Source of the DNA: Scyliorhinus canicula | Taxonomy: Eukaryota | Length of the DNA stretch: 64,000 bases | Direction of reading: 5' to 3' | Assembly (NCBI RefSeq): GCF_902713615.1 | Contig: NC_052155.1 | Span: 126,133,031 to 126,197,030, forward strand | Shown here: one piece after another, positions 752 through 63,670 of the stretch | How the letters are laid out: the number at the start of each line of letters is the position of its first letter | Position numbering within the stretch: the first letter of the stretch is position 1 | Made by a program: the position numbers and the translations under genes | The notes under the pieces: model-generated | The model's input: only the letters and a program-made list of their open reading frames with translations | Database searches by the model: none | What the model was told of the DNA's origin: nothing

Positions 752-2793
752 TGCTCTAGGTGTAGCATAAGCGGCTTCCTTGTGGTGCACTTGACAAAGG
801 AAGGATCAGACGTGGAGATAACTTCAACACATTTATTAAACTATATACACTTCTATAACTTGGGTTTGACGCTACTGCTAATCCTACTATAGCTACTCAG
901 ACTGACTAACCAGACTACTACAATCCACGTGGTGGGAGTGATATCAAGTCATCCCTGTGTCTCTACTCACTGACTGTCTCCACTGGAAAGAGGCAGATCA
1001 TGTGTGTGGTGTCCTTTATATATGAGTTGGTGTAATGCCCTCCTGTGGTCGTGTCAGCTCTGTGTGTATCGTGAATGCCCATTGGTCATGTCCTATATAA
1101 CTGATCTATTGGTTGAATGTGTGTGATGCCTTTAGTGTCTAGCTAGTCTACAAGTATTTACATTAACCCCTTGAGTATTTAGTGATGCACATCACCACAT
1201 CCCCCCCTTTTTTATATGTTGCATATTTTCTGTACACTAAGAAAATTGAACAAGAACAGGTAGATAAGTGATGCTATGTACAAGTTATGAGAACAGTGAT
1301 TAAACAATAAGTCTAAATCATATGTGTGAGTCCAAAACCCATTATCATGGTTGAATGTCATTCTTGTTTGGTTGGTTAGTTTGACGGTGGCATGTCCTTG
1401 TGAACGCCATCAGTGTCCCTGTGCATAAGGAACCAAGAAGTGGTCAAATCACTTTGTTGTCTGATTTGGAGTCTTTTTCTCTTCCGATGCTTGTGATACG
1501 GATGTTGGATGGCATCTGTCCTGAAAGCCAGGTTGCCTGTTGGTAGTGCAGCACACGTGAATTGGGAAGATGCATCTTCCAGCCATGGTATGTGTGAGCT
1601 GAGCAGTAACAGTGTCCCTCATGGGCAGAGTTGTACCATGTCGTACCAGTCGTAGTTCCATTGGTGTAGTCTTTGTCGTTGGTACGCGTCGTGTCGTTGT
1701 CTTTGATGTGGTATTCAGATGTCGTGATGTTGTGTTCGCTGCACTCAAGGACCACACTCTGTGGATAATACGAGTCCGTCGCACAGTTACTCATGTCAGT
1801 GTGTGTTGTGGCATCTGCTGTCACCTTGAGCATGCCGTCACTGAGGTTGCGGCACTCCCTGTCTGGAGTCAAGTCCAGCTTACTCGAATCAGCGTTGGCA
1901 TTTGGTTGCTTCCCATCTGGAGTCAAAACATTCAGGAATGCATTTGCTTGTGGAGAGGCTCGAGCGAGTGAGGTTGGAAGCATCGTGGTGTCACCGGAGT
2001 CACCAGTGGTGTCATAGTGATCGTCTCTGTGCACACTAGCTGAGGTCTGTCACTTTGCACATCTGGCATGGGAAGTGAGATGCTGTTGTCACTCGTCTCA
2101 CATACCGTGGGTAGAGCCTCAGTAGCTGCTTGCTGTTCACTTGGGTTGGGTAAATTGTCAGAGTCTTCATCTGGTGGCGCAAACAATGTGGGTGGACCGT
2201 CATTGTTGTGCTGTTTGCTTGAGCATGGCAGACTTGCATTGTCTGCTGCTAGTTGCTGGTTGTCACTGCTTGCTGAGTTGTAACTATATGGATTGAAACA
2301 GTCACTCCTGTGGTACCATGTCTTGTTATGCTCTAGGTGTAGCATAAGCGGCTTCCTTGTGGTGCACTTGACAAAGGAAGGATCAGAAGTGGAGATAACT
2401 TCAACACGTTTATTAAACTATATACACTTCTATAACTTGGGTTTGACGCTACTGTTAATCCTACTATAGCTACTCAGACTGACTAACCAGACTGCTACAA
2501 TCCATGAGGTGGGAGTGATAGCAAATCAACCCTGTGTCTCTACTCACTGACTGTCTCCACTGGAAAGAGGCAGATCATGTGTGTGGTGTCCTTTATATAT
2601 GGGTTGGTGTAATGCCCTCCTGTGGTCGTGTCACCTCTGTGTGTATCGTGAATGCCCATTGGTCGTGTCCTATCTAACTGATCTATTGGTTCAGTGTGTG
2701 TGTGTGATGTCTCTGGTGCTCCCTCTAGTGTCTAGCTAGTCTACATGTATTTACATTAACCCTTGTGTATTTACAGTGATGCACTTTACCACA
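752..2793 (-). mobile_element. non-autonomous LTR retrotransposon (two 450-470 bp LTRs, ~1.1 kb internal region)
   Basis: Direct repeats 752-1199 and 2324-2793 (minus strand TGTGGT...TAACA); PBS TGGTACCACAGGAGTG at 2303-2318; polypurine tract A6G7A at 1200-1213; no gag/pol motifs inside. Confidence 0.85.
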
Positions 2794-3202
2794 ACACAGT
2801 TGATTCAGTCTGGGAAACTTGGTCAAGGCTGTTGCTTGCAGGCAATCCTTGGGATTTTCAAAGTCAACTAGGTATACACTGTATCTCGAGACAAAATCCT
2901 TTTATCATACTTCTATAACATAGTTTCATCATCCTTTCATGTTCTTTAGAATCAGTGAATGCAAACTCCAGACAGAGAATTAGCAATCACATTACTTTTT
3001 CCTGTAACATGTATAATCTTTAGGATAAATGGTTGTAGCATTAAATTCCAGTGGAAGAATCTGACGTTTTTTTTATCAGAATTTCCTCTTAAAAACCTCA
3101 AAGGTATGGTCAGTATAAATTACTATTTCCCATTTATTGTTAGTAGCATATACCTCAAACCTTTGGAAAGCCAATGCAAGACTCAAAAACCTTATTCTCA
3201 TT

Positions 3203-3388
3203 TTTAAAACAAAATTCCAATTAAGGGGCAATTTAGTGTGGCCAATCCATCTACCCTGCACATCTTTGGGTTGTGCGGTGAGACCCACCCAGACACTGGG
3301 AGAATGTGTAAACTCCACACGGACGGTGACTCGGGGCTGGGATCAGACCTGGGGTCCTTGGCACCAGTGCTAACCACTGTGCCACTGG
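3203..3388 (-). mobile_element. HE1/V-type tRNA-derived SINE (short A-rich tail type)
   Basis: tRNA-like head, V-core (GTTTACACATTCTCCC...GATGTGCAGGGTAGATGGATTGGCCAC...AAATTGCCCCTTAATTGG). Confidence 0.8.
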
Positions 3389-5879: not shown

Positions 5880-8005
5880 CGTGATTAGGGGTCGGAGAGA
5901 TGTCCCAATGCAGGAATTCACCTCGCTCCTCACCCATTCTGCTCCCGGTTCCTTCACTTATCCCCTTACTCTCTGCTGTGGCCGCTCAGTGGTAGAACTG
6001 CAGGGTTTGGGAGGGCCAGCCTCGCGTATTTCTTCTCCTTTGTATGATTTTTTTTTGATCCTCAGGTAGTCGTGTCCCCCCCCCCCGCCGCAAACACGCA
6101 CACACAAACGCAATGATTAGTTTGTCTTCTGTGCTGAAGAAGGCCATGTGGGTGTAGATCATGAGGAATATGAAGAGGAACTTGGGCAGTACTTCATTTT
6201 GATTATCTACACTCTCCCCGCTTGTGGGAGTGGGACCCATCGCTGCAGACTCATCAGGTTCCATTTGTGGATCCGTGTCCAGTCGTGGACTATTTGGATT
6301 CCAAGGTAGTGGAATTTGGTGGTCATGGGAGCACTGCACAGTAGTTTCACCCAAGAGATGAACCCTGGCCCATGCCCAAACCGCCCCAGTACCTCCATGA
6401 GGTGCTTTCACTCAACTCTGTCGAAGGCCTTTTCAGCATCCAGGGAAATGTTCACTCTGGTGTTCTCTCCCTGGATGGGGCCATTGTCACGTTCAGCAAG
6501 CGCCTGATGTTCAATATTAGTTGCCTGCCCTTGACAAAGCCTGTCTGGTCCTCCGCAACCACCTCTGGTATGCAGCTCCCCAGCCGCTTAGCCAGGGGTT
6601 TTTGCCAGGATTTTTGCGTCTACATTGAGCAGGAAGATGGGCCTGTAGGACCTGCACTCAGTCGGGCCTTTGTCCTTTTTGGGTATCAGTAATATTGAGA
6701 CTTGTGCTAGTGTTGTGGCAGGGAGCCCTTTACCAACAAGTCTGCAAATATCTTCTGCATGTGTGGAGCCAATGCTGTCACAAATTTGTTGTAAAGGTCC
6801 TCCGGGAATCCATCTGGCCCTGGAGCCATCCCTGCCTGCATGGAGTTGATACTCTCAATGGCCTCTCCCAGTTCGAATGGTGCTTCCATGCCCCGTCTCC
6901 TATCTTCTCCCACAACCGGCATGGGGTATCTGGTTCAGTGCTTATTACGTTGTTTCTTCCCAGCCCATGTTTGTGGACAAAGTCATCTGCCTCCGCCGGT
7001 GCGGTGATACAGAGCTTGGCTGGGTACAGCATTCCAAACTGCACATTGTTTTTATAAAGGGCCTCCTAGGCTTTGTTAAATTTTGCCCAGCGCTCGGTCG
7101 GATCCGTCCTGATGTCCTGAAACACCTGGATCGAGTGACCCTTCCAGTTGCAGGACCTGGTGTGCCTCGCCCAATTTAAGATCCTTTCCTGGTCTTGGTA
7201 CCGGTGCAGCTTTGCGATAATGAACTGTCTGTTCCCTGGCCTTGTGCTTTGGCTGGAGTGACCTGTGACCTCTGTCTACTTCTGAAGGTTTCTGGAAGAT
7301 TTCCCTTCCCATCAGTTTGCCTAACATCTGTAGGGTTCCTGCCTGGCTATGTATTCCGTAGGGTTTCTGCCCTCGGTTCCCTCCAGTAGGCCCACTATGC
7401 ATAGGTTCTGCCGGTACAACCAGTTTTTTTGATCCTGGACCTTCCCCTTTAGTGTCCCTTGCGTCACCACCAACCTTGCCATTTCCGTCCTTCGTACGGC
7501 GATCCGGTTGCTCTGGTCAGTCGAGGCCTTCTCCAGCTTCCTGATCATCGCTTCCTGAGTCTCCAGCCGCCTTTCTGCATTTTTCAGTGCCACCTGCAGG
7601 GTGACCAGTGCCTCCACCACTTCAACCTTCGCCATCATCTCTAGCTTAATGGCTTCTATGAGTTCCTGAAGTTCCTGCTTTAGGAACTCCCTCCATTCAT
7701 TCATTTTTTGGGGGTGAGGGGAAGAAACCTTGCCTGTGGTCTGGTGGTCCTTCCCGTTCAGGTTTGGCCAGGATCTTGGCCATTACATCAGTCCTTCTGT
7801 CCAGGCTTTTGCTACTGTTGCTGTCTTTTGGGCCCCTGGAGCTGCTGCTTGGCATGTCTTGTCCTGCTAGTGTTGAAGGAGGGTGAGAGGTTTTTCTCCC
7901 TGCTTTAGTGGGATAATTTGGGTTTAAAGTGCCAAAATTCAAGTTTCCAGGAGGAGAGCCACCATTCGTGCGTCTGGTCAACACATCCCCGTCACCGGAA
8001 ATCAC
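5880..8005 (-). mobile_element. L1-clade LINE, internally deleted and degraded
   Basis: ORF1 coiled coil plus RQNLCIVGLLEGTEG motif (7704-7321); RT fragment EAIESINSMQAGMAPGPDGFPEDLYNKF (6922-6707); no APE domain between them. Confidence 0.8.
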
Positions 8006-10330: not shown

Positions 10331-47295
<36,965 letters not shown>

Positions 47296-56112: not shown

Positions 56113-59100
56113 TGTGGTGATATAACCACTGTAGTGATGTGTACTTGCAGTAGGGGGATGTATGCCTGTACCTGTAATACAGGTTCCTCCGCTAAGCCCC
56201 TGCCGGCTAGCTCCGCCCACAGGGAGCTTGTGTATAAATATACATGTGAGTCACTCAGACCCTAGTCTACAGTTGCAGATGGAGGAATAGCATCGCACAG
56301 CAATAAAGCCTCTATTGTACCTGTCTCTCGTCTTTGAGTATAATTGTTAGCGCCACAGTTTATTGCTGTGTGATTTTCCGTTCACCATGGACATCAGAAT
56401 CAAGCCTGACCATCTGCAGCTGGATCCGCAGTCACCTCATGCCAGAAAAGACTTTGTTCACTGGCTGGCAGTCTTCGAGGCCTACATCTCTTCAGCGGAC
56501 CCTCCCCCGACGGAGGCTCAGAAAAAGCAACTCCTGTACTCCAGACTTAGCTCCAGTGTCTTTCCGCTAATTCGAGATGCAGCTGACTGCACCACAGCTA
56601 TGGAACTGCTCAAGGAAAACTATGCACAGTCGGCGAACACCCTGTTTGCGAGGCATCAACTCTCTACTCGCGTCCAGCAGCCGGGTGAGTCGATTGAGGA
56701 CTTCTGGAGGGCCCTTATACCTCTGGTACGAGACTGGGACTGCCGGGCCCTCACAGCCACGGAACACTCTGACTTACTCATGCGCGATGCCTTTGTTACA
56801 GGCATTGCATCGGACCCCATCCGGCAACGACTGCTGGAAGGGGCCGCCCCCGACCTCGCGGCCGCAAAGGCTCTGCCGCTTTCCATGACGGCCGCCTCCC
56901 GTTGTGCGCTATCTTACTCCACTAGCCACTCGGCCCACCCATCCTACCCCGCAAACGGCCCCCAAGGCCCACCCGTCCTACCCCTCGTGGATCCCGCAAA
57001 TGGCCCCCCCAGCAGCCGCCCCCACGCACTACGCCTGCGCTGCTCGCCGCATCGCACTCCCTGGGGGTCCCCACTGTTGCTTCTGCGGTCAGCAGAAGCA
57101 CCCCCGCCAGCACTGCCCGGCCCGCACCACGACCTGCAAAGCTTGTGGCAAGAAAGGCCACTTTGCAGCGGTGAGTCAGTCCCGGACGGTTGCCGCTATC
57201 GCGCCCCTGGTCCCCTTGCCTCAGCCGCTCGTGCAATGGGCCCCGCCATCCACTTCCCCTGACCCCACGTGCGATCAGTGGGCGCTGCCACCTCTCGCAG
57301 CCCCTTCCACGTGCGCTTCATGGGCGCCACCATCTTCATCCACCACTGCCATGTGTGTTCCATGGGCGCTGCCATTTTGTCCCGACCCCACAACGTGCGC
57401 TCCATGGGTGCCGCCATTTTATCCACAGGTAAACCAGACGACGCCATTTTGTCCTCCCCCCGGGACGGGGCCACGGGACATGGGTCGCACCGCTCCTTGT
57501 CGGACTCCTCTGACTCGACCGCCGATCACCCGCTACTCGCCTCCGTTACGCTTGACCAGTTGCGTCCTCGCAACCTGGCACCCTCTTCCACATCGGTGCT
57601 GGTCAACGGCCCCGTGACCTCCTGCCCCATCGACTCCGGGAGCACCGAGGGCTTCGTCCACCCGGACACGGTAAGGCGCTATTCCCTTGCGGTCCATCCC
57701 ACCAACCGGCAGATCTCTCTCGCCTCCGGATCCCACTCTGTCCTGATCCGGGGTTCCTGCCTGGTTAAACTTACTGTACAGGGCATGGAATTCGACCGTT
57801 TCCATCTGTACATTCTCCTCAACCTCTGCGCATCACTCTTACTAGGCCTGGATTTCCAGTGCAATCTCCAGAGCCTCACCCTCAAATTCGGCGGACCTCT
57901 ATCTCCCCTCACCGTTTGTGGCCTCACGACCCTCAAGGTCGAGCCTCCCTCACTCTTTGCCAGTCTGACCGCAGACTGCAAGCCCGTCGCCACCAGGAGC
58001 AGACGGTACAGCACCCAGGACAAGGCCTTCATCAGGTCCGAAGTCCAGCGGCTGCTTCGGGAGGGTATCATCGAGGCCAGCAACAGCCCTTGGAGAGCCC
58101 AGGTGGTAGTGGTTAAGACCGGGGAGGAACACAGGATGGTCGTGGACTACAGCCAGACCATCAACCGGTACACGCAGCCCGACGCGTACCCCCTCCCCCG
58201 CATTTCTGATATGGTCAATCAGATTACACAGTACCGGGTCTTCTCTACTATTGACCTGAAATCCGCCTACCACCAGCTCCCTATCCGTAAATCGGACCGT
58301 CCCTACACTACCTTCGAGGCAGACGGTCATCTGTACCAATTTCTTAGGGTTCCCTTCGGCGTCACGAATGGAGTCTCGGTATTTCAACGAGAAATGGACC
58401 GAATGGTTGACCGGTACGGACTGCAGGCCACCTTCCTGTACCTTGACAATGTCACCATCTGCGGCCATGACCAGCAGGACCATGATGCCAACCTTTCTAA
58501 ATTCCTCCACACTGCATCTCTCCTTAATCTCACGTACAACAAGGAGAAGTGCATGTTCCGCACAGACCGCTTAGCCATCCTCGGCTACGTAGTCCAAAAC
58601 GGACTACTGGGGCCCGACCCCGACCGCATGCGCCCCCTCATGGTGCTCCCCCTCCCCCCCTGCCCCAAGGCCCTCAAACGCTGCCTTGGGTTCTTTTCTT
58701 ATTACGCCCAGTGGGTCCCACAATACGCGGACAAGGCCCGCCCACACATTTTCCCCTCTCGGCCGAGGCACAACAGGCCTTCGCCCGCATTCGATCTGAC
58801 ATAGCCAGGGCCGGGATGCACGCAGTAGACAAGACACTGCCTTTCCAAGTAGAAAGCGACGCTTCGGATGTCGCACTTGCCGCCACGCTGAATCAGACAG
58901 GCAGACCCGTGGCATTGTTTTCATGCACCGTCCACGCCTCCGAAATTCGGCATTCCTCTGTTGAAAAGGAGGCCCAGGCAATCGTTGAAGCGGTGCAGCA
59001 CTGGAGGCATTACCTGGCTGGCAGGAGATTCACTCTCCTCATTGACCAACGGTTGGTAGCCTTCATGTTCGATAACACACAGCGGGGCAAGATCAAGAAT

Positions 59101-60723
59101 GACAAAATCTTGCGGTGGAGAATCGAGCTCTCCACCTTTAACTATGAAATCTTGTATCGCCCCGGCAAGCTCAATGAGCCCCAGACGCCCTATCCCGAGG
59201 TACATGTGCCAGCGCACAAGTGAACCAGCTCCGTGCCTTGCACAAGAGCCTTTGCCATCCGGGGGTCACTCGCTTGTACTATCTAATCAAAGCCTGCAAT
59301 CTGCCCTACTCCGTCGAGGAAGTACGGACAGTCACCAGAGACTGCCAGGTCTGTGCTGAGTGCAAGCCGCACTTCTACCGGCCAGATCGCGCGTGCCTGG
59401 TGAAAGCGTCCCGCCCCTTTGAAAGCCTCAACGTGGACTTCAAAGGGCCCCTCCCCTCCACCGACCGCAACACCTACATCCTTAGTATGGTCGATGAATT
59501 TTCTAGGTTTCCCTTCGCCATCCCATGCCTGGATATGACGTCTGCCACCGTCATCAAGGCCCTCGACTCCATATTCGCTCTGTTCGGTTTCCCCGACTAT
59601 ATCCACAGTGACAGGGGATCCTCATTCATGAGCGATGAGCTGCGTCAGTTCCTGCTCAGCAGAGGTATCGCCTCCAGCAGGACGACCAGCTACAACCCCC
59701 GGGGAAACGGGCAGGTAGAGAGGGAGAACGGGACGGTATGGAGGGCCGTCCAGCTGGCCCTACGGTCCAGGAACCTCCCAGCCGCTCGCTGGCAGCAGGT
59801 CCTCCCTGATGCGCTCCATTCCATTCGGTCGCTACTGTGCACCGCAACTAACAGTACACCCCATGAACCGTGTTTTTGCCTTCCCTTGGAAGTCTACATC
59901 CGGGGTGTCGCTCCCGATGTGGCTCACGACTCCGGGCCCAGTCCTTCTCCGTAGGCATGTCCGGCACCACAAGGTGGAACCCCTGGTGGACAAAGTATGC
60001 CTTCTCCACGCCAACCCTCCGTATGCCTACGTGGAGTTCCCTGACGGCCGCCAGGACACAGCCTCGCTCCGGGACCTGGCTCCCTCAGGTGCCGATCCCA
60101 TGCCCACGCCCCTTTTCCCCCCGCGCCACCCTCCTTTTCCCCGGCGCCCCCCTATTCGTCCCCACCAGGTCCATCCCTCGTCCCCCTGCCCACACTGGAG
60201 GACACGGAATATTTTGGCTCGCTCTCGGAGTCATCGCGCCAACAGCCACCACCGGCAGCACCTGCACCATTGTTGCCATCACCGCCTGTGCCGACGTCGC
60301 CACCACAGCTATGCCAATCACAGCGGAACGTTCGACCGCCGATTCGGCTCAACCTGAAACCTGCTAACCGGATGGACTCTTGGTTTTCTTTGTTTGGACC
60401 CTCTTGTAAATAGCTCATCCTTTGTATTATAGTTACACGTCGCCCCCTTCGGACTCTTTTTTTTTACAGGGGGTGAAGGTGATGATATAACCACTGTAGT
60501 GATGTGTACTTGCAGTAGGGGGAATGTATGCCTGTAGCTGTAATACAGGTTCCTCCGGTAAGCCCTTGCCGGCTAGCTCCGCCCACAGGGAGCCTATGTA
60601 TAAATATGCATGTGAGTAACACAGACCCTAGTCTACAGTTGCAGATGGAAGAATGGCATCTCACAGCAATAAAGCCTCTATTGTACTTGTCTCTCGTCTT
60701 TGAGTATAATTGTTAGCGCCACA
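56113..60723 (+). mobile_element. full-length Gypsy/Ty3 LTR retrotransposon (Mag-like), frameshifted
   Basis: LTRs 56113-56357 and 60478-60723 (14 substitutions plus 1 indel by my count); TSD agtac/tgtac; gag from ATG 56387 with two CCHC-type knuckles; protease IDSGS; RT YPLPRI..DLKSAYHQ..PFGVTNG..YLDN; RNase H ESDAS..EKEA; integrase HHCC, VDFKGP, SDRG, GQVER; PPT at 60468-60477. Confidence 0.96.
56387..60357 (+). pseudogene. gag-pol polyprotein of the Gypsy element, broken by about 5 frameshifts
   Basis: ORF-track segments 56363-57262, 56904-57617, 57269-58804, 58549-59223, 59220-59954 and 59809-60357 tile gag-PR-RT-RH-IN. Confidence 0.9.
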
Positions 60724-62202: not shown

Positions 62203-62540
62203 AGCCAGGAGTGGCTTGTGCTGGGGAATGGCAAGAAAGACACCAGAGAGCAGATTTTCTTTTTGCTGAAATATACATTATTCAAAAAATACCTGAAAGA
62301 ACATCACAAAACATTTGAAACAGGCCATCATAAAGAGTGCAATAATATTCAAGTTTTCTACACACATTATACTGCACTCTAAGGTGCTTCAATAGAATAA
62401 AAGGAACAAATTACAGACATTTCAAAATCGTCATTGCAGAAAATGCAGTGATATTTAAGTTATCTACATCAGTGTTTTTGCAACTTTTTTCCGGGGACCC
62501 ATTTTTACCAACCAGCCAAGCTTCGGGACCCAACCCGGCC

Positions 62541-62717
62541 GACCTTTGCAACCCACGCCGGCTGACCTTTGCGACCCACGCTGGCCGACCTTTGCGACCC
62601 ACGCTGGCCGACCTTTGCGACCCACGCTGGCCGACCTTTGCGACCCACGCTGGCTGACCTTTGCGACCCACGCTGGCTGACCTTCGCGACCCACGCCGGC
62701 CAACCTTCACGACCCAC
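62541..62717. repeat. 23-bp subterminal tandem repeat, ~7.7 copies
   Basis: Unit GACCTTTGCGACCCACGCTGGCC. Confidence 0.95.
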
Positions 62718-62760
62718 CATTTTCTCTTACCTTGTTTGCTGCTAACAAAATGGAGGAAAT

Positions 62761-63034
62761 GGTTTTGGGTCCCTTTGGCCCTCGTACATGCTCCTCCAAT
62801 GGAACCTGTTGGATGAAGGTGAAGCCTTCCATTGTCAGAAAATATAGAGTCTCCATCTGTCCAAAGTTAAGCTCCACAGCACAATTGTGGCACAGAACAT
62901 GCAGAAATAAGGCTCAGTTAGCGAGACTGTCTTAATGCGACGCCCAGATCCTGACCATTCTTGGAGTAAGAGACTTCCACTTCATCAGCAGCAAAGTTCA
63001 GAAAGCAATCAATCACATAATTCTCCCCGAACAT
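62761..63034 (-). pseudogene. hnrnpu: hnRNP U (SAF-A)-like SPRY-domain fragment
   Basis: [33 protein letters not shown], frameshift, [56 protein letters not shown]; matches remembered hn[74 protein letters not shown]. Confidence 0.88.
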
Positions 63035-63670
63035 TTTGCAGCGTCTTTTAACAATGCCGGATGCGACGGTCTTCAAAAAGGCTGGGAGCATATAAAAACA
63101 AAACGCAGCCGCACTGCGCATGCGTGCCTGCTCATCGGTGCGCATGCATTTTTTATATGCTCCCAGCCTTTTTGAAGGCCGCCGCAGCCGGCATTGTTAC
63201 GAGCCGGCTGCTGCAGCTGTTGCGTGCGAATTTGCGCAATCGGGAGTGCCACAACGGACGACTCCGTGACATTCCCGACACCCGCCCGCAACCCACCCGT
63301 GGGTTGCGCCCCCTACTTTGAAAATGCCTAATCTACATCAAAGCAGGCACAGCTGCCAGAAAGGGAAAAGGAGCAGAAGTATTTTCTGTTTCTCTGGCAG
63401 CGCAGTGCAACTCCCCTTTAAGAGTTCTGTGGACTCGAAATCTTAACTCTGTTTCCCTCTCCACAGATTCTGCTGGACCATTTTATGTTTTTATTCCCCT
63501 TTAAGGGCTGCTGATTGTCTTAACTGGTGTCATGGACGTTAAATACCCCCTCCCACCCCCTTATTCATTGGCTTTAAAGCTCTTTGTACCATCTGGTGAT
63601 CATGAAAAGTACAAGGTAAGTACAAGACTTTCTTTTTGCAGGCATGTGGCCAATGAACAGTGTATGTAAC

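What the first reader, a model, noticed from the sequence alone, without database searches (positions are those of the whole stretch)
62470..63330. hAT DNA transposon carrying an apparently spliced (mRNA-derived) fragment of host hnRNP U
Seen: an 861-bp unit with a perfect 8-bp TSD (atctacat) and hAT-like TIRs, so this unit was inserted by transposition. On the minus strand, 63034-62761 encodes ~90 codons of hnRNP U SPRY domain, with one frameshifting deletion and one TGA. Known: 8-bp NNNTANNN TSDs are typical of Charlie/Buster hATs. As I recall, human HNRNPU has an intron exactly between ..ITCFA and NFESDE... Here the equivalent ..IDCFL|NFAADE.. junction (62999/62998) is uninterrupted. Inference: a Pack-TIR (Pack-MULE-like) element whose cargo came from spliced RNA, cDNA or a retrocopy, placed where the transposase sits and in the same orientation, with an AG|GTAAG donor-like site ~30 nt downstream. 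If multicopy, this would be a vertebrate DNA-transposon family spreading a host-gene fragment, able to donate exons or produce small RNAs matching hnrnpu.
Basis: partly seen in the sequence, partly recalled or inferred. Interest (0 to 1): 0.88.

Follow-up and report, generated by a model that had tools for sequence, protein, structure and literature searches.

The report
Catshark hAT transposon carrying spliced hnRNP-U fragment
This is a real, decayed cut-and-paste (hAT) transposon whose transposase gene was replaced by an intron-less piece of the host hnRNP U gene; it then spread to other sites in catshark genomes, where gene models use it as an exon. It is an uncommon but not unprecedented kind of gene-fragment capture.

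Summary

- **Element:** 62470-63330 is an 861-bp non-autonomous hAT element with an 8-bp duplication (ATCTACAT), weak 15-bp inverted ends and GC-rich subterminal motifs.
- **Cargo:** on the minus strand, about 63040-62765 is a decayed fragment of roughly 91 codons from the end of the hnRNP U SPRY domain. It has one frameshifting deletion of about 11 nt and one TGA. It sits where the transposase ORF was.
- **Intron-less junction:** the ..DCFL|NFAADE.. junction (62999/62998) is uninterrupted. A phase-0 intron lies at exactly that position in snake hnRNP U, in three further bony-vertebrate genomic contigs, and in the paralogues HNRNPUL1 and HNRNPUL2. The intron is therefore ancestral. I could not retrieve a shark hnrnpu gene.
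- **Mobilised after capture:**
  - A copy in Scyliorhinus torazame has the same cargo junctions and ends but its own duplication.
  - Three RefSeq gene models carry the same cargo-to-hAT-tail junction: S. torazame FNDC5b, a small S. torazame gene and one S. canicula gene.
  - The splice donor right after the cargo is used in the small gene (checked on DNA) and in FNDC5b (inferred from the protein).
the scan recorded a similar element on other DNA of this genome (s1-216878, unchecked).

This is a Pack-TIR-type element with spliced cargo. Still open: whether the template was a retrocopy or RNA/cDNA, the copy number in this genome, and expression.

The parts
62462..62469 (.). Left copy of the 8-bp target-site duplication, ATCTACAT (pattern nnnTAnnn)
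   Evidence: family D6. The exact repeat is 10 bp because the right flank also begins CA.
63331..63338 (.). Right copy of the target-site duplication, ATCTACAT
   Evidence: family D6.
62470..63330 (-). Whole non-autonomous hAT element (861 bp). The former transposase orientation is the minus strand.
   Evidence: Homology to the S. torazame copy L001:2613-3270 begins and ends exactly at these termini, and the flanks are unrelated.
62470..62484 (+). Terminal inverted repeat at the 3' end of the element in transposase orientation (CAGTGTTTTTGCAAC)
   Evidence: It is homologous to the ...CACTG end of L001 and to the right end of the related hAT remnant at about 19386.
63316..63330 (-). Terminal inverted repeat at the 5' end (reverse complement TAGGCATTTTCAAAG). 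It matches the other end at 9 of 15 positions.
   Evidence: It is homologous to CAGACATTGTCAAAC in L001 and to 16304-16322 in the window.
63273..63308 (-). GC-rich subterminal motif region: a GTGGGTTGCG / CGCAACCCAC palindrome plus GGGCGGGTGTCGGGA. A candidate transposase-binding site.
   Evidence: (I10-I19) shows the same 10-mer in inverted orientation at both ends. In one search the only other window match is the related hAT end at 16323-16346, with 0 expected by chance.
62537..62717 (+). Tandem array of 7.9 copies of a 23-bp unit, each containing the subterminal GCGACCCAC motif
   Evidence: D1. L001 and the 19.3-kb remnant have only 2-3 units.
62725..62737 (-). Consensus 5' splice-donor-like site AACAAG|GTAAGAG; the junction falls between 62732 and 62731
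   Evidence: Read directly. It is conserved in L001 and in the related hAT remnant just after the transposase stop codon. It is used as a donor in the S. torazame model XP_072364563.1. The FNDC5b models end the exon at ...ISSKQ.
62738..62764 (-). Remnant of the last codons of the hAT transposase ORF (..SSILLAANK). The boundary with the cargo is uncertain by about 6 nt.
   Evidence: It aligns to the ORF end (..APLLH*) of the related hAT at 19262-19287. The junction [11 protein letters not shown] is shared by P0013, P0018 and P0227.
62765..62998 (-). Cargo part 2: most of the hnRNP U exon that begins NF..DEVE and normally ends ..KKDCE. Here it is cut at GPKGPK(TI). It contains the ~11-nt frameshifting deletion (about 62917-62935) and the TGA at 62916-62914.
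   Evidence: (E 2e-18). Exon limits come from L003, L005, L004 and L002.
62999..63040 (-). Cargo part 1: the last ~13 codons of the upstream hnRNP U exon ([13 protein letters not shown]), joined without an intron to part 2 at 62999|62998
   Evidence: The intron at the homologous position was shown.
63042..63206 (-). hAT-derived 57-nt inverted repeat (arms 63042-63098 and 63150-63206) abutting the cargo start. It carries TATAAAA-like and GCGCATGCG (NRF1-like) motifs. It may be the element's promoter or 5' leader.
   Evidence: I1, 89% complementary. One search gives an RNA fold of -105.5 kcal/mol, z = -12.4. It is present in L001 with a truncated second arm. The promoter role is inference only.
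16304..19386 (+). Related, older hAT remnant in the same window. It has both ends, a transposase C-terminal ORF (19103-19285) followed by AAG|GTAAGCG, and a LINE reverse-transcriptase remnant nested at about 17150-18910 (minus strand).
   Evidence: (hAT C-terminal dimerisation cluster, score 0.90).

Best explanation
This is a non-autonomous hAT transposon of the Buster/Charlie type of target-site duplication. Almost its whole transposase ORF has been replaced by about 275 bp copied from a spliced template of the host hnRNP U gene. The copied piece is the last 13 codons of one SPRY-domain exon fused directly to about 78 codons of the next exon.

What is shown:
- The element kept its two ends, the subterminal GC-rich motif repeats, a 5' palindromic leader, the last few transposase codons and the strong splice donor just behind them.
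- After the capture it moved to other loci. A derivative with a shortened cargo arose and also spread in Scyliorhinus.
- In this window the cargo is a dead passenger, with a frameshift and a TGA.

What is inferred:
- A related transposase, supplied in trans, moved the element.
- The capture most likely happened when gap repair or replication of a full-length element switched template onto an hnrnpu retrocopy or cDNA/RNA and then switched back near the end of the ORF. The 5' switch point lies 1-2 nt from the foot of a 57-bp hairpin.
- Because cargo plus donor (and in some copies an upstream acceptor or ATG) form a spliceable unit, copies are written into host gene models as first or internal exons.
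For: - **Ends, duplication and motifs:**
- **Independent copy:** one copy on S. torazame chromosome CM105022.1 has the same termini and both hAT/cargo junctions but a different duplication.
- **Junction in other proteins:** the same cargo-to-tail junction, [11 protein letters not shown], occurs in:
  - S. canicula XP_038640542.1, which reads on through the 23-bp repeats and the terminus into a different flank;
  - S. torazame FNDC5b isoforms X1 and X2, on another chromosome.
- **Cargo identity:** E 2e-18 to hnRNP U representatives. Identity is 65-69% to hnRNP U against 52-60% to UL1/UL2. In the tree the cargo is sister to ray-finned-fish hnRNP U, support 86/82.
- **Intron position:** a phase-0 GT..AG intron lies exactly at CF(A/I/L)|(N/D)F in:
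  - Crotalus hnRNP U (L003, 6086|6654);
  - three other genomic contigs (L005, L004, L002);
  - the paralogues UL2 (L006) and UL1 (L007).
- **Tail and donor are hAT-derived:** the related element in the window ends its transposase ORF the same way, and its C-terminal ORF resembles hAT dimerisation domains.
- **Donor use:**
Against: - No shark hnrnpu gene could be retrieved, so a lineage-specific intron loss in sharks is not excluded.
- The only other copy read as DNA (L001) lacks the middle of the cargo, including the exon junction. The three cargo-bearing gene models also begin only at ..NFGQMET. No second long-cargo copy was seen directly.
- The inverted ends are weak (9/15).
- Pfam did not recognise the transposase remnant.
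- No autonomous partner was found.
- No poly(A), no microhomology and no donor retrocopy could be examined, so the capture mechanism is inference.
- RefSeq models are predictions; I saw no RNA data.
Confidence: 0.85

Rival explanations
1. The capture was from ordinary genomic DNA. The shark hnrnpu gene (or a shark-specific paralogue that served as the source) simply lacks this intron, so nothing RNA-derived is involved.
For: No shark hnrnpu locus was examined. The cargo shows a few residues that are UL2-like (FGEN, VELNFGQ, PKTI), so the source gene is not pinned down to a known sequence.
Against: The intron is at the identical phase-0 position in hnRNP U of a snake, of a tetrapod-like contig and of two fish-like contigs. 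It is also there in both paralogues, UL1 and UL2, so it predates their divergence. The tree places the cargo with hnRNP U.
Confidence: 0.06
2. The cargo entered by LINE-mediated retroposition of an hnrnpu mRNA into a hAT element. Later deletions trimmed it and the transposase. This is the route described for bat Helitrons.
For: The cargo is intron-less. LINE reverse transcriptases are active in this genome, and a LINE remnant is nested in the sister hAT at 17.1-18.9 kb. There is precedent in PMC4224331.
Against: There is no poly(A), no 3' UTR and no duplication flanking the cargo. The cargo is an internal 275-bp piece of a coding sequence of about 2.5 kb. Its limits coincide with the loss of the transposase ORF, with only the last few codons kept. 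That pattern is the usual outcome of abortive gap repair with filler DNA.
Confidence: 0.1
3. This is not a transposon insertion. The 8-bp repeat and CAG/CTA ends are chance, and the hnRNP U piece is part of an ordinary processed pseudogene or segmental duplicate.
For: Such 8-mer/trinucleotide configurations occur about 6 times elsewhere in the window by chance or through other repeats. The inverted ends are weak.
Against: An independent copy in another genome shares the whole structure from terminus to terminus, with unrelated flanks and its own duplication. The subterminal motifs are shared with another hAT remnant in the window.
Confidence: 0.02

Closest known systems
Pack-TIR elements of animals, for example Pack-hAT-N8_XT of Xenopus tropicalis (Tan et al. 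2021, PMC8277862), and plant Pack-MULEs
   Same: Non-autonomous TIR transposons whose interior is a duplicated piece of a host gene. The multicopy cases spread by transposition after capture. They are often transcribed as chimeras with host genes. Template switching is the proposed origin.
   Different: That survey deliberately discarded captures that were intron-less copies of multi-exon genes, to avoid retroduplicates. Here the cargo spans an exon-exon junction. It replaces the transposase ORF precisely and lies in front of a retained splice donor.
Helitron families of vespertilionid bats carrying retrogene fragments (Thomas et al. 2014, PMC4224331)
   Same: A DNA transposon propagates an intron-less, mRNA-derived host gene fragment to many loci.
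   Different: Helitrons are rolling-circle elements, not cut-and-paste hAT. Most of those cases show poly(A) and LINE-type duplications, meaning retroposition into the element. Neither is present here.
MER20 (a human hAT-type element) containing the ARF6 retrogene, noted in Tan et al. 2021
   Same: A retrogene-derived sequence inside a vertebrate DNA transposon.
   Different: That case is single and nearly full-length, and the authors could not separate it from recurrent retroposition. Here an internal coding fragment is shared by copies at several loci and in at least two species.
Turmoil-1 of C. elegans (Sela et al. 2008, PMC2572040)
   Same: An animal DNA transposon with transduplicated host coding fragments.
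   Different: There the captured rsp-2 fragment still contains its intron, so the capture was genomic, and it sits in the terminal repeats.
Buster family of hAT transposons
   Same: An 8-bp duplication with central TA (nnnTAnnn) in both copies read here: ATCTACAT and C(G/C)TTAAAC. The consensus is described in PMC3517528.
   Different: The transposase phylogeny was not tested, because only a 60-aa C-terminal remnant of a relative is available.

Membership tests
hAT superfamily (non-autonomous member) | 8-bp target-site duplication | tested here: met
   ATCTACAT on both sides. The L001 copy has CGTTAAAC/CCTTAAAC, 7 of 8.
hAT superfamily (non-autonomous member) | Short imperfect terminal inverted repeats beginning YAG | tested here: met
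   CAGTGTTTTTGCAAC against TAGGCATTTTCAAAG, 9 of 15. L001 has CAGACATTGTCAAAC against CAGTGTTCTTCAAAC, 10 of 15.
hAT superfamily (non-autonomous member) | Relatives encode a hAT transposase with the C-terminal dimerisation domain | tested here: inconclusive
   The related remnant at 16304-19386 has a 60-aa C-terminal ORF. The protein atlas places it with hAT C-terminal dimerisation clusters (score 0.90, 191 of 256 features). Pfam gave no hit at E <= 1. No intact autonomous copy was found.
hAT superfamily (non-autonomous member) | Copies at different loci with different duplications (mobility) | tested here: met
   Window copy against L001:2613-3270. P0013 reads into a third, different flank.
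Buster family of hAT | Duplication consensus nnnTAnnn | tested here: met
   Both duplications have TA at positions 4-5. The consensus is taken from PMC3517528. Two sites are a small sample.
Buster family of hAT | Transposase groups with Buster transposases in a phylogeny | not tested
Pack-TIR / transduplicating TIR element | Interior derived from a non-transposon host gene | tested here: met
   hnRNP U family, E 2e-18. Tree. Weak SPRY hit.
Pack-TIR / transduplicating TIR element | A parental copy exists elsewhere in the genome, not flanked by the transposon | not testable with these tools
   The genome cannot be searched. An unchecked scan note (s1-207473) places an HNRNPU promoter on another piece of this genome.
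Processed pseudogene / retrocopy (as the nature of the cargo) | Lacks introns present in the parent gene | tested here: met
   The junction at 62999|62998 is uninterrupted. The intron is present at that position in hnRNP U, UL1 and UL2 genes of other vertebrates. The shark parent was not examined.
Processed pseudogene / retrocopy (as the nature of the cargo) | Poly(A) tail and LINE-type duplication flanking the copy | tested here: not met
   The cargo is joined directly to hAT sequence on both sides. There is no A-run and no flanking repeat.

The most novel reading that the evidence does not exclude
The cargo was copied directly from hnrnpu mRNA or cDNA during repair of the excision gap or a stalled fork in a hAT element, that is, RNA-templated repair in a vertebrate germ line. 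The resulting unit of promoter-like leader, coding exon and splice donor has since acted as a mobile exon donor in catsharks. This includes a constitutive in-frame 53-residue insertion in the FNDC5b (irisin precursor) protein of S. torazame.
Probability: 0.2. Interest if true: 0.75.

Novelty: new variant of a known kind. Interest (0 to 1): 0.5.

Why it matters
Gene-fragment capture by cut-and-paste transposons is well documented in plants but sparsely in animals. The one broad animal survey filtered out intron-less captures by design.

This is a vertebrate hAT family that carries a spliced host fragment, transposed after the capture, and is written into host gene models through its own splice donor. 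It shows that DNA transposons can spread mRNA-derived coding sequence and ready-made exons. It also offers a concrete case for asking whether the template was a retrocopy or RNA itself.

It does not reveal a new kind of element or mechanism.

Tried and rejected
**Searches that did not give what I needed**
- Retrieving a shark hnRNP U protein or gene. The search with snake hnRNP U listed only the best 120 of 413 hits, none from a shark.
- The length filter of that tool prevents short cargo queries from reaching full-length proteins.
- Searches with the cargo-bearing proteins P0013 and P0227 found only other cargo-bearing models and one teleost exon ORF.
- DNA of the S. canicula and FNDC5b copies could not be fetched because the gene models span more than 300 kb. 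P0227 itself is not on record.
- PDB holds no hnRNP U SPRY structure; the only hit was a weak DDX1 SPRY match.
- Pfam does not recognise the 60-aa transposase remnant or the second cargo piece.
- No other copy of the element exists in the window; only a distant relative is present.
- A sequence look-up in the scan's notes was blank.

**Ideas considered and dropped**
- A stretch of similarity between the cargo's last 30 nt and the transposase end of the related hAT looked like a possible microhomology for the template switch. By my hand estimate that stretch alone scores about the same as the shuffled controls, so it is not evidence.
- I also rejected the idea that the short-cargo form is ancestral. 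L001 keeps the first ~10 nt of the long cargo (GTTCGGGGAG) before an AT-rich filler, so it is a deletion derivative.

Full report
**1. What is in the sequence**

The stretch 62470-63330 is bounded by an exact direct repeat. The repeat is 10 bp long (ATCTACATCA). Read as the 8-bp duplication ATCTACAT, it leaves an 861-bp unit starting CAGTG... and ending ...GCCTA.

The two ends are only weakly inverted, matching at 9 of 15 positions. Both ends carry the same GC-rich 10-mer in opposite orientation: GCGACCCACG / CGTGGGTTGC (I10-I19). At one end this motif is amplified in a 23-bp tandem array of 7.9 units at 62537-62717.

On the minus strand there are two open pieces:
- [39 protein letters not shown] (63037-62921)
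- [50 protein letters not shown] (62913 to about 62765)

Between them lie a frameshift and a TGA at 62916-62914. Aligned to vertebrate hnRNP U, the frameshift equals a deletion of about 11 nt. The TGA falls where the relatives have Arg. Downstream, at 62737-62725, is AACAAG|GTAAGAG, a consensus 5' splice site.

**2. Is it more than chance?**

An 8-mer repeat next to YAG/CTR trinucleotides is not rare. The same configuration occurs six times elsewhere in the window within 3.5 kb. The duplication alone is therefore weak evidence. The decisive evidence comes from other copies.

- A distant relative lies in the same window at about 16304-19386. Its left end, its right end and its subterminal motifs align to ours.
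- That relative still has the C-terminal 60 codons of a transposase ORF (19103-19285). The protein atlas places this ORF with hAT C-terminal dimerisation clusters, although Pfam does not detect it.
- Its ORF is followed immediately by AAG|GTAAGCG. This is the same donor-like site, in the same place, as in our element.
- A LINE reverse-transcriptase remnant is nested in it.

**3. Other copies of the cargo-bearing element**

A search of 1.8 billion representative proteins with the second cargo piece returned hnRNP U proteins at E down to 2e-18. It also returned two short proteins whose match runs past the hnRNP U part into the hAT tail.

- **P0013** is RefSeq XP_038640542.1 of Scyliorhinus canicula. 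It reads ...[12 protein letters not shown]..., continues through the 23-bp repeats and the terminal repeat, and then enters a flank different from ours.
- **P0018** is XP_072364563.1 of S. torazame. Its locus (L001) holds a 658-bp copy at 2613-3270.
  - It aligns to our element from terminus to terminus.
  - Both hAT/cargo junctions are the same.
  - The flanks are unrelated.
  - It has its own duplication, CGTTAAAC/CCTTAAAC.
  - The middle of its cargo is replaced by an AT-rich filler. The first ~10 nt (GTTCGGGGAG) and the last ~105 nt of the cargo remain, so it is a deletion derivative of the long form seen in our window.
- **A third locus** appeared in a further search. Both annotated isoforms of S. 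torazame FNDC5b (P0227, P0231), on another chromosome, contain an in-frame 53-residue segment, VLRKKMQNFGEMET...[17 protein letters not shown]. It lies between the FN3 domain and the transmembrane part.

The capture therefore predates all these insertions, and the element transposed after acquiring the cargo. In the S. torazame small-gene model the first exon ends exactly at the CAAG|GTAAGAG donor. The FNDC5b segment ends at the same point. These are predicted models, and I saw no RNA data.

An unchecked note of this scan (s1-216878) reports another 'Pack-hAT with spliced HNRNPU SPRY fragment' on a different piece of this same genome.

**4. Identity of the cargo**

Over 88 aligned residues the cargo is 65-69% identical to hnRNP U of fishes, a caecilian and a snake. 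It is 60% identical to UL2 and 52-60% to UL1.

In a maximum-likelihood tree of this segment the cargo is sister to ray-finned-fish hnRNP U (support 86/82). It lies outside the well-supported UL1 and UL2 groups. A few residues (FGEN, VELNFGQ, PKTI) resemble UL2. The segment is short and the tree is only moderately supported.

No shark hnRNP U could be retrieved. The source is therefore best described as the hnRNP U member of the family, with moderate confidence.

**5. The spliced junction**

I mapped proteins onto genomic loci.

| Gene / locus | Upstream exon ends | Next exon starts | Intron |
|---|---|---|---|
| Crotalus tigris hnRNP U (L003) | ...DENDVIGCFA at 6086, then GTAAGT | NFDGDEVE... 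at 6654, after ...GGCAG | 567 nt, phase 0 |
| Tetrapod-like contig (L005) | 883 | 1281 | same position |
| Fish-like contig (L004) | | | same position, 117 nt, in frame |
| Fish-like contig (L002) | | | same position |
| HNRNPUL2, lizard (L006) | 7638 | 8044 | same position |
| HNRNPUL1, snake (L007) | 1012 | 3824 | same position |

The position is shared by all three paralogues. The intron therefore predates their divergence and was present in the ancestor of shark hnrnpu.

In our element the homologous point, ..IDCFL|NFAADE.. at 62999|62998, is continuous. The next intron of the real genes lies after ..KKDCE. The cargo stops about 7 codons before it.

What remains open is a shark-specific intron loss, which I rate at about 5%.

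**6. How it most likely arose and works**

*Shown*
- The cargo occupies the place and orientation of the transposase ORF. Only the last few transposase codons and the donor remain behind it.
- No poly(A), 3' UTR or internal duplication flanks the cargo.

*Inferred*
- Capture occurred by template switching during gap repair or replication of a full-length element. The new template was a spliced one, either an hnrnpu retrocopy or cDNA/RNA. This is the route proposed for internally deleted elements with filler DNA and for Pack-TIRs (PMC8277862).
- The upstream switch point lies 1-2 nt from the foot of a 57-bp inverted repeat (63042-63206). That repeat would fold very stably (-105.5 kcal/mol, z = -12.4) and could stall a polymerase.
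- The element is then moved in trans by a related transposase that recognises the ends and the repeated GC-rich motif.
- The palindromic leader contains TATAAAA-like and GCGCATGCG motifs. It may be the family's promoter.
- Together with the cargo ORF and the donor, it forms a promoter-exon-donor unit. That would explain why annotation pipelines build first exons (XP_072364563.1) and cassette exons (FNDC5b) from copies.

The copy in this window is dead coding-wise. It also lacks the AT-rich filler in which the other copies' acceptor or ATG lies.

**7. Comparison with what is known**

- This is a Pack-TIR-type (transduplicating) element. Animal Pack-TIRs, including multicopy Pack-hAT in frog, have been described. 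That survey removed intron-less captures on purpose.
- Propagation of retrogene fragments by a DNA transposon has been described for bat Helitrons. It was presented there as the first case for any DNA transposon.
- The C. elegans Turmoil-1 capture retains its intron.
- In two full-text searches of the held library I found no report of a hAT family carrying a spliced host fragment in cartilaginous fishes. This is not an exhaustive search.

The finding is a new variant of a known kind, not a new category.

**8. Verdict**

- Confidence that this is a hAT element with an intron-less hnRNP U-family cargo, mobilised after capture: 0.85.
- Retrocopy versus RNA as the template is undecided.
- The small-RNA and regulatory ideas are untested.
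- Interest: moderate, 0.5.

Noticed in passing
window 16304-19386: An older relative of the same hAT lineage. It has both ends, a 60-aa transposase C-terminal ORF (19103-19285) followed by the same AAG|GTAAG donor-like site, and a LINE reverse-transcriptase remnant nested on the minus strand (about 17150-18910). No clear target-site duplication could be found.
   Followed up: partly
S. torazame FNDC5b proteins P0227/P0231 (XP_072355158.1, XP_072355157.1); no DNA could be fetched: Both annotated isoforms of the irisin-precursor gene FNDC5b contain an in-frame 53-residue segment derived from a copy of this element (short cargo plus hAT tail, ending at the element's donor). The Chiloscyllium partial orthologue stops at the preceding exon boundary.
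   Followed up: partly
window 63042-63206: A 57-nt inverted repeat inside the element, with a predicted RNA hairpin of -105.5 kcal/mol. It has TATAAAA-like boxes on both strands and two GCGCATGCG (NRF1-like) motifs in the loop region. It is partly conserved in the S. torazame copy. It may be a bidirectional promoter or a fork-stalling structure.
   Followed up: partly
L001:2860-3000: In the S. torazame copy the deleted middle of the cargo is filled by about 125 bp of AT-rich, (TTTATTCA)-like repetitive sequence. This filler supplies the ATG, and probably the acceptor, used in the gene models.
   Followed up: no
window 56300-60400: A run of long ORFs (up to 511 aa) in a GC-rich stretch just upstream of the element.
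   Followed up: no
window 17154-17828 (minus strand): The LINE ORF remnant hits Pfam ALKBH8_N (PF09004, E 5.6e-9). This family model appears to match a LINE-derived segment rather than a real AlkB-related domain here.
   Followed up: no
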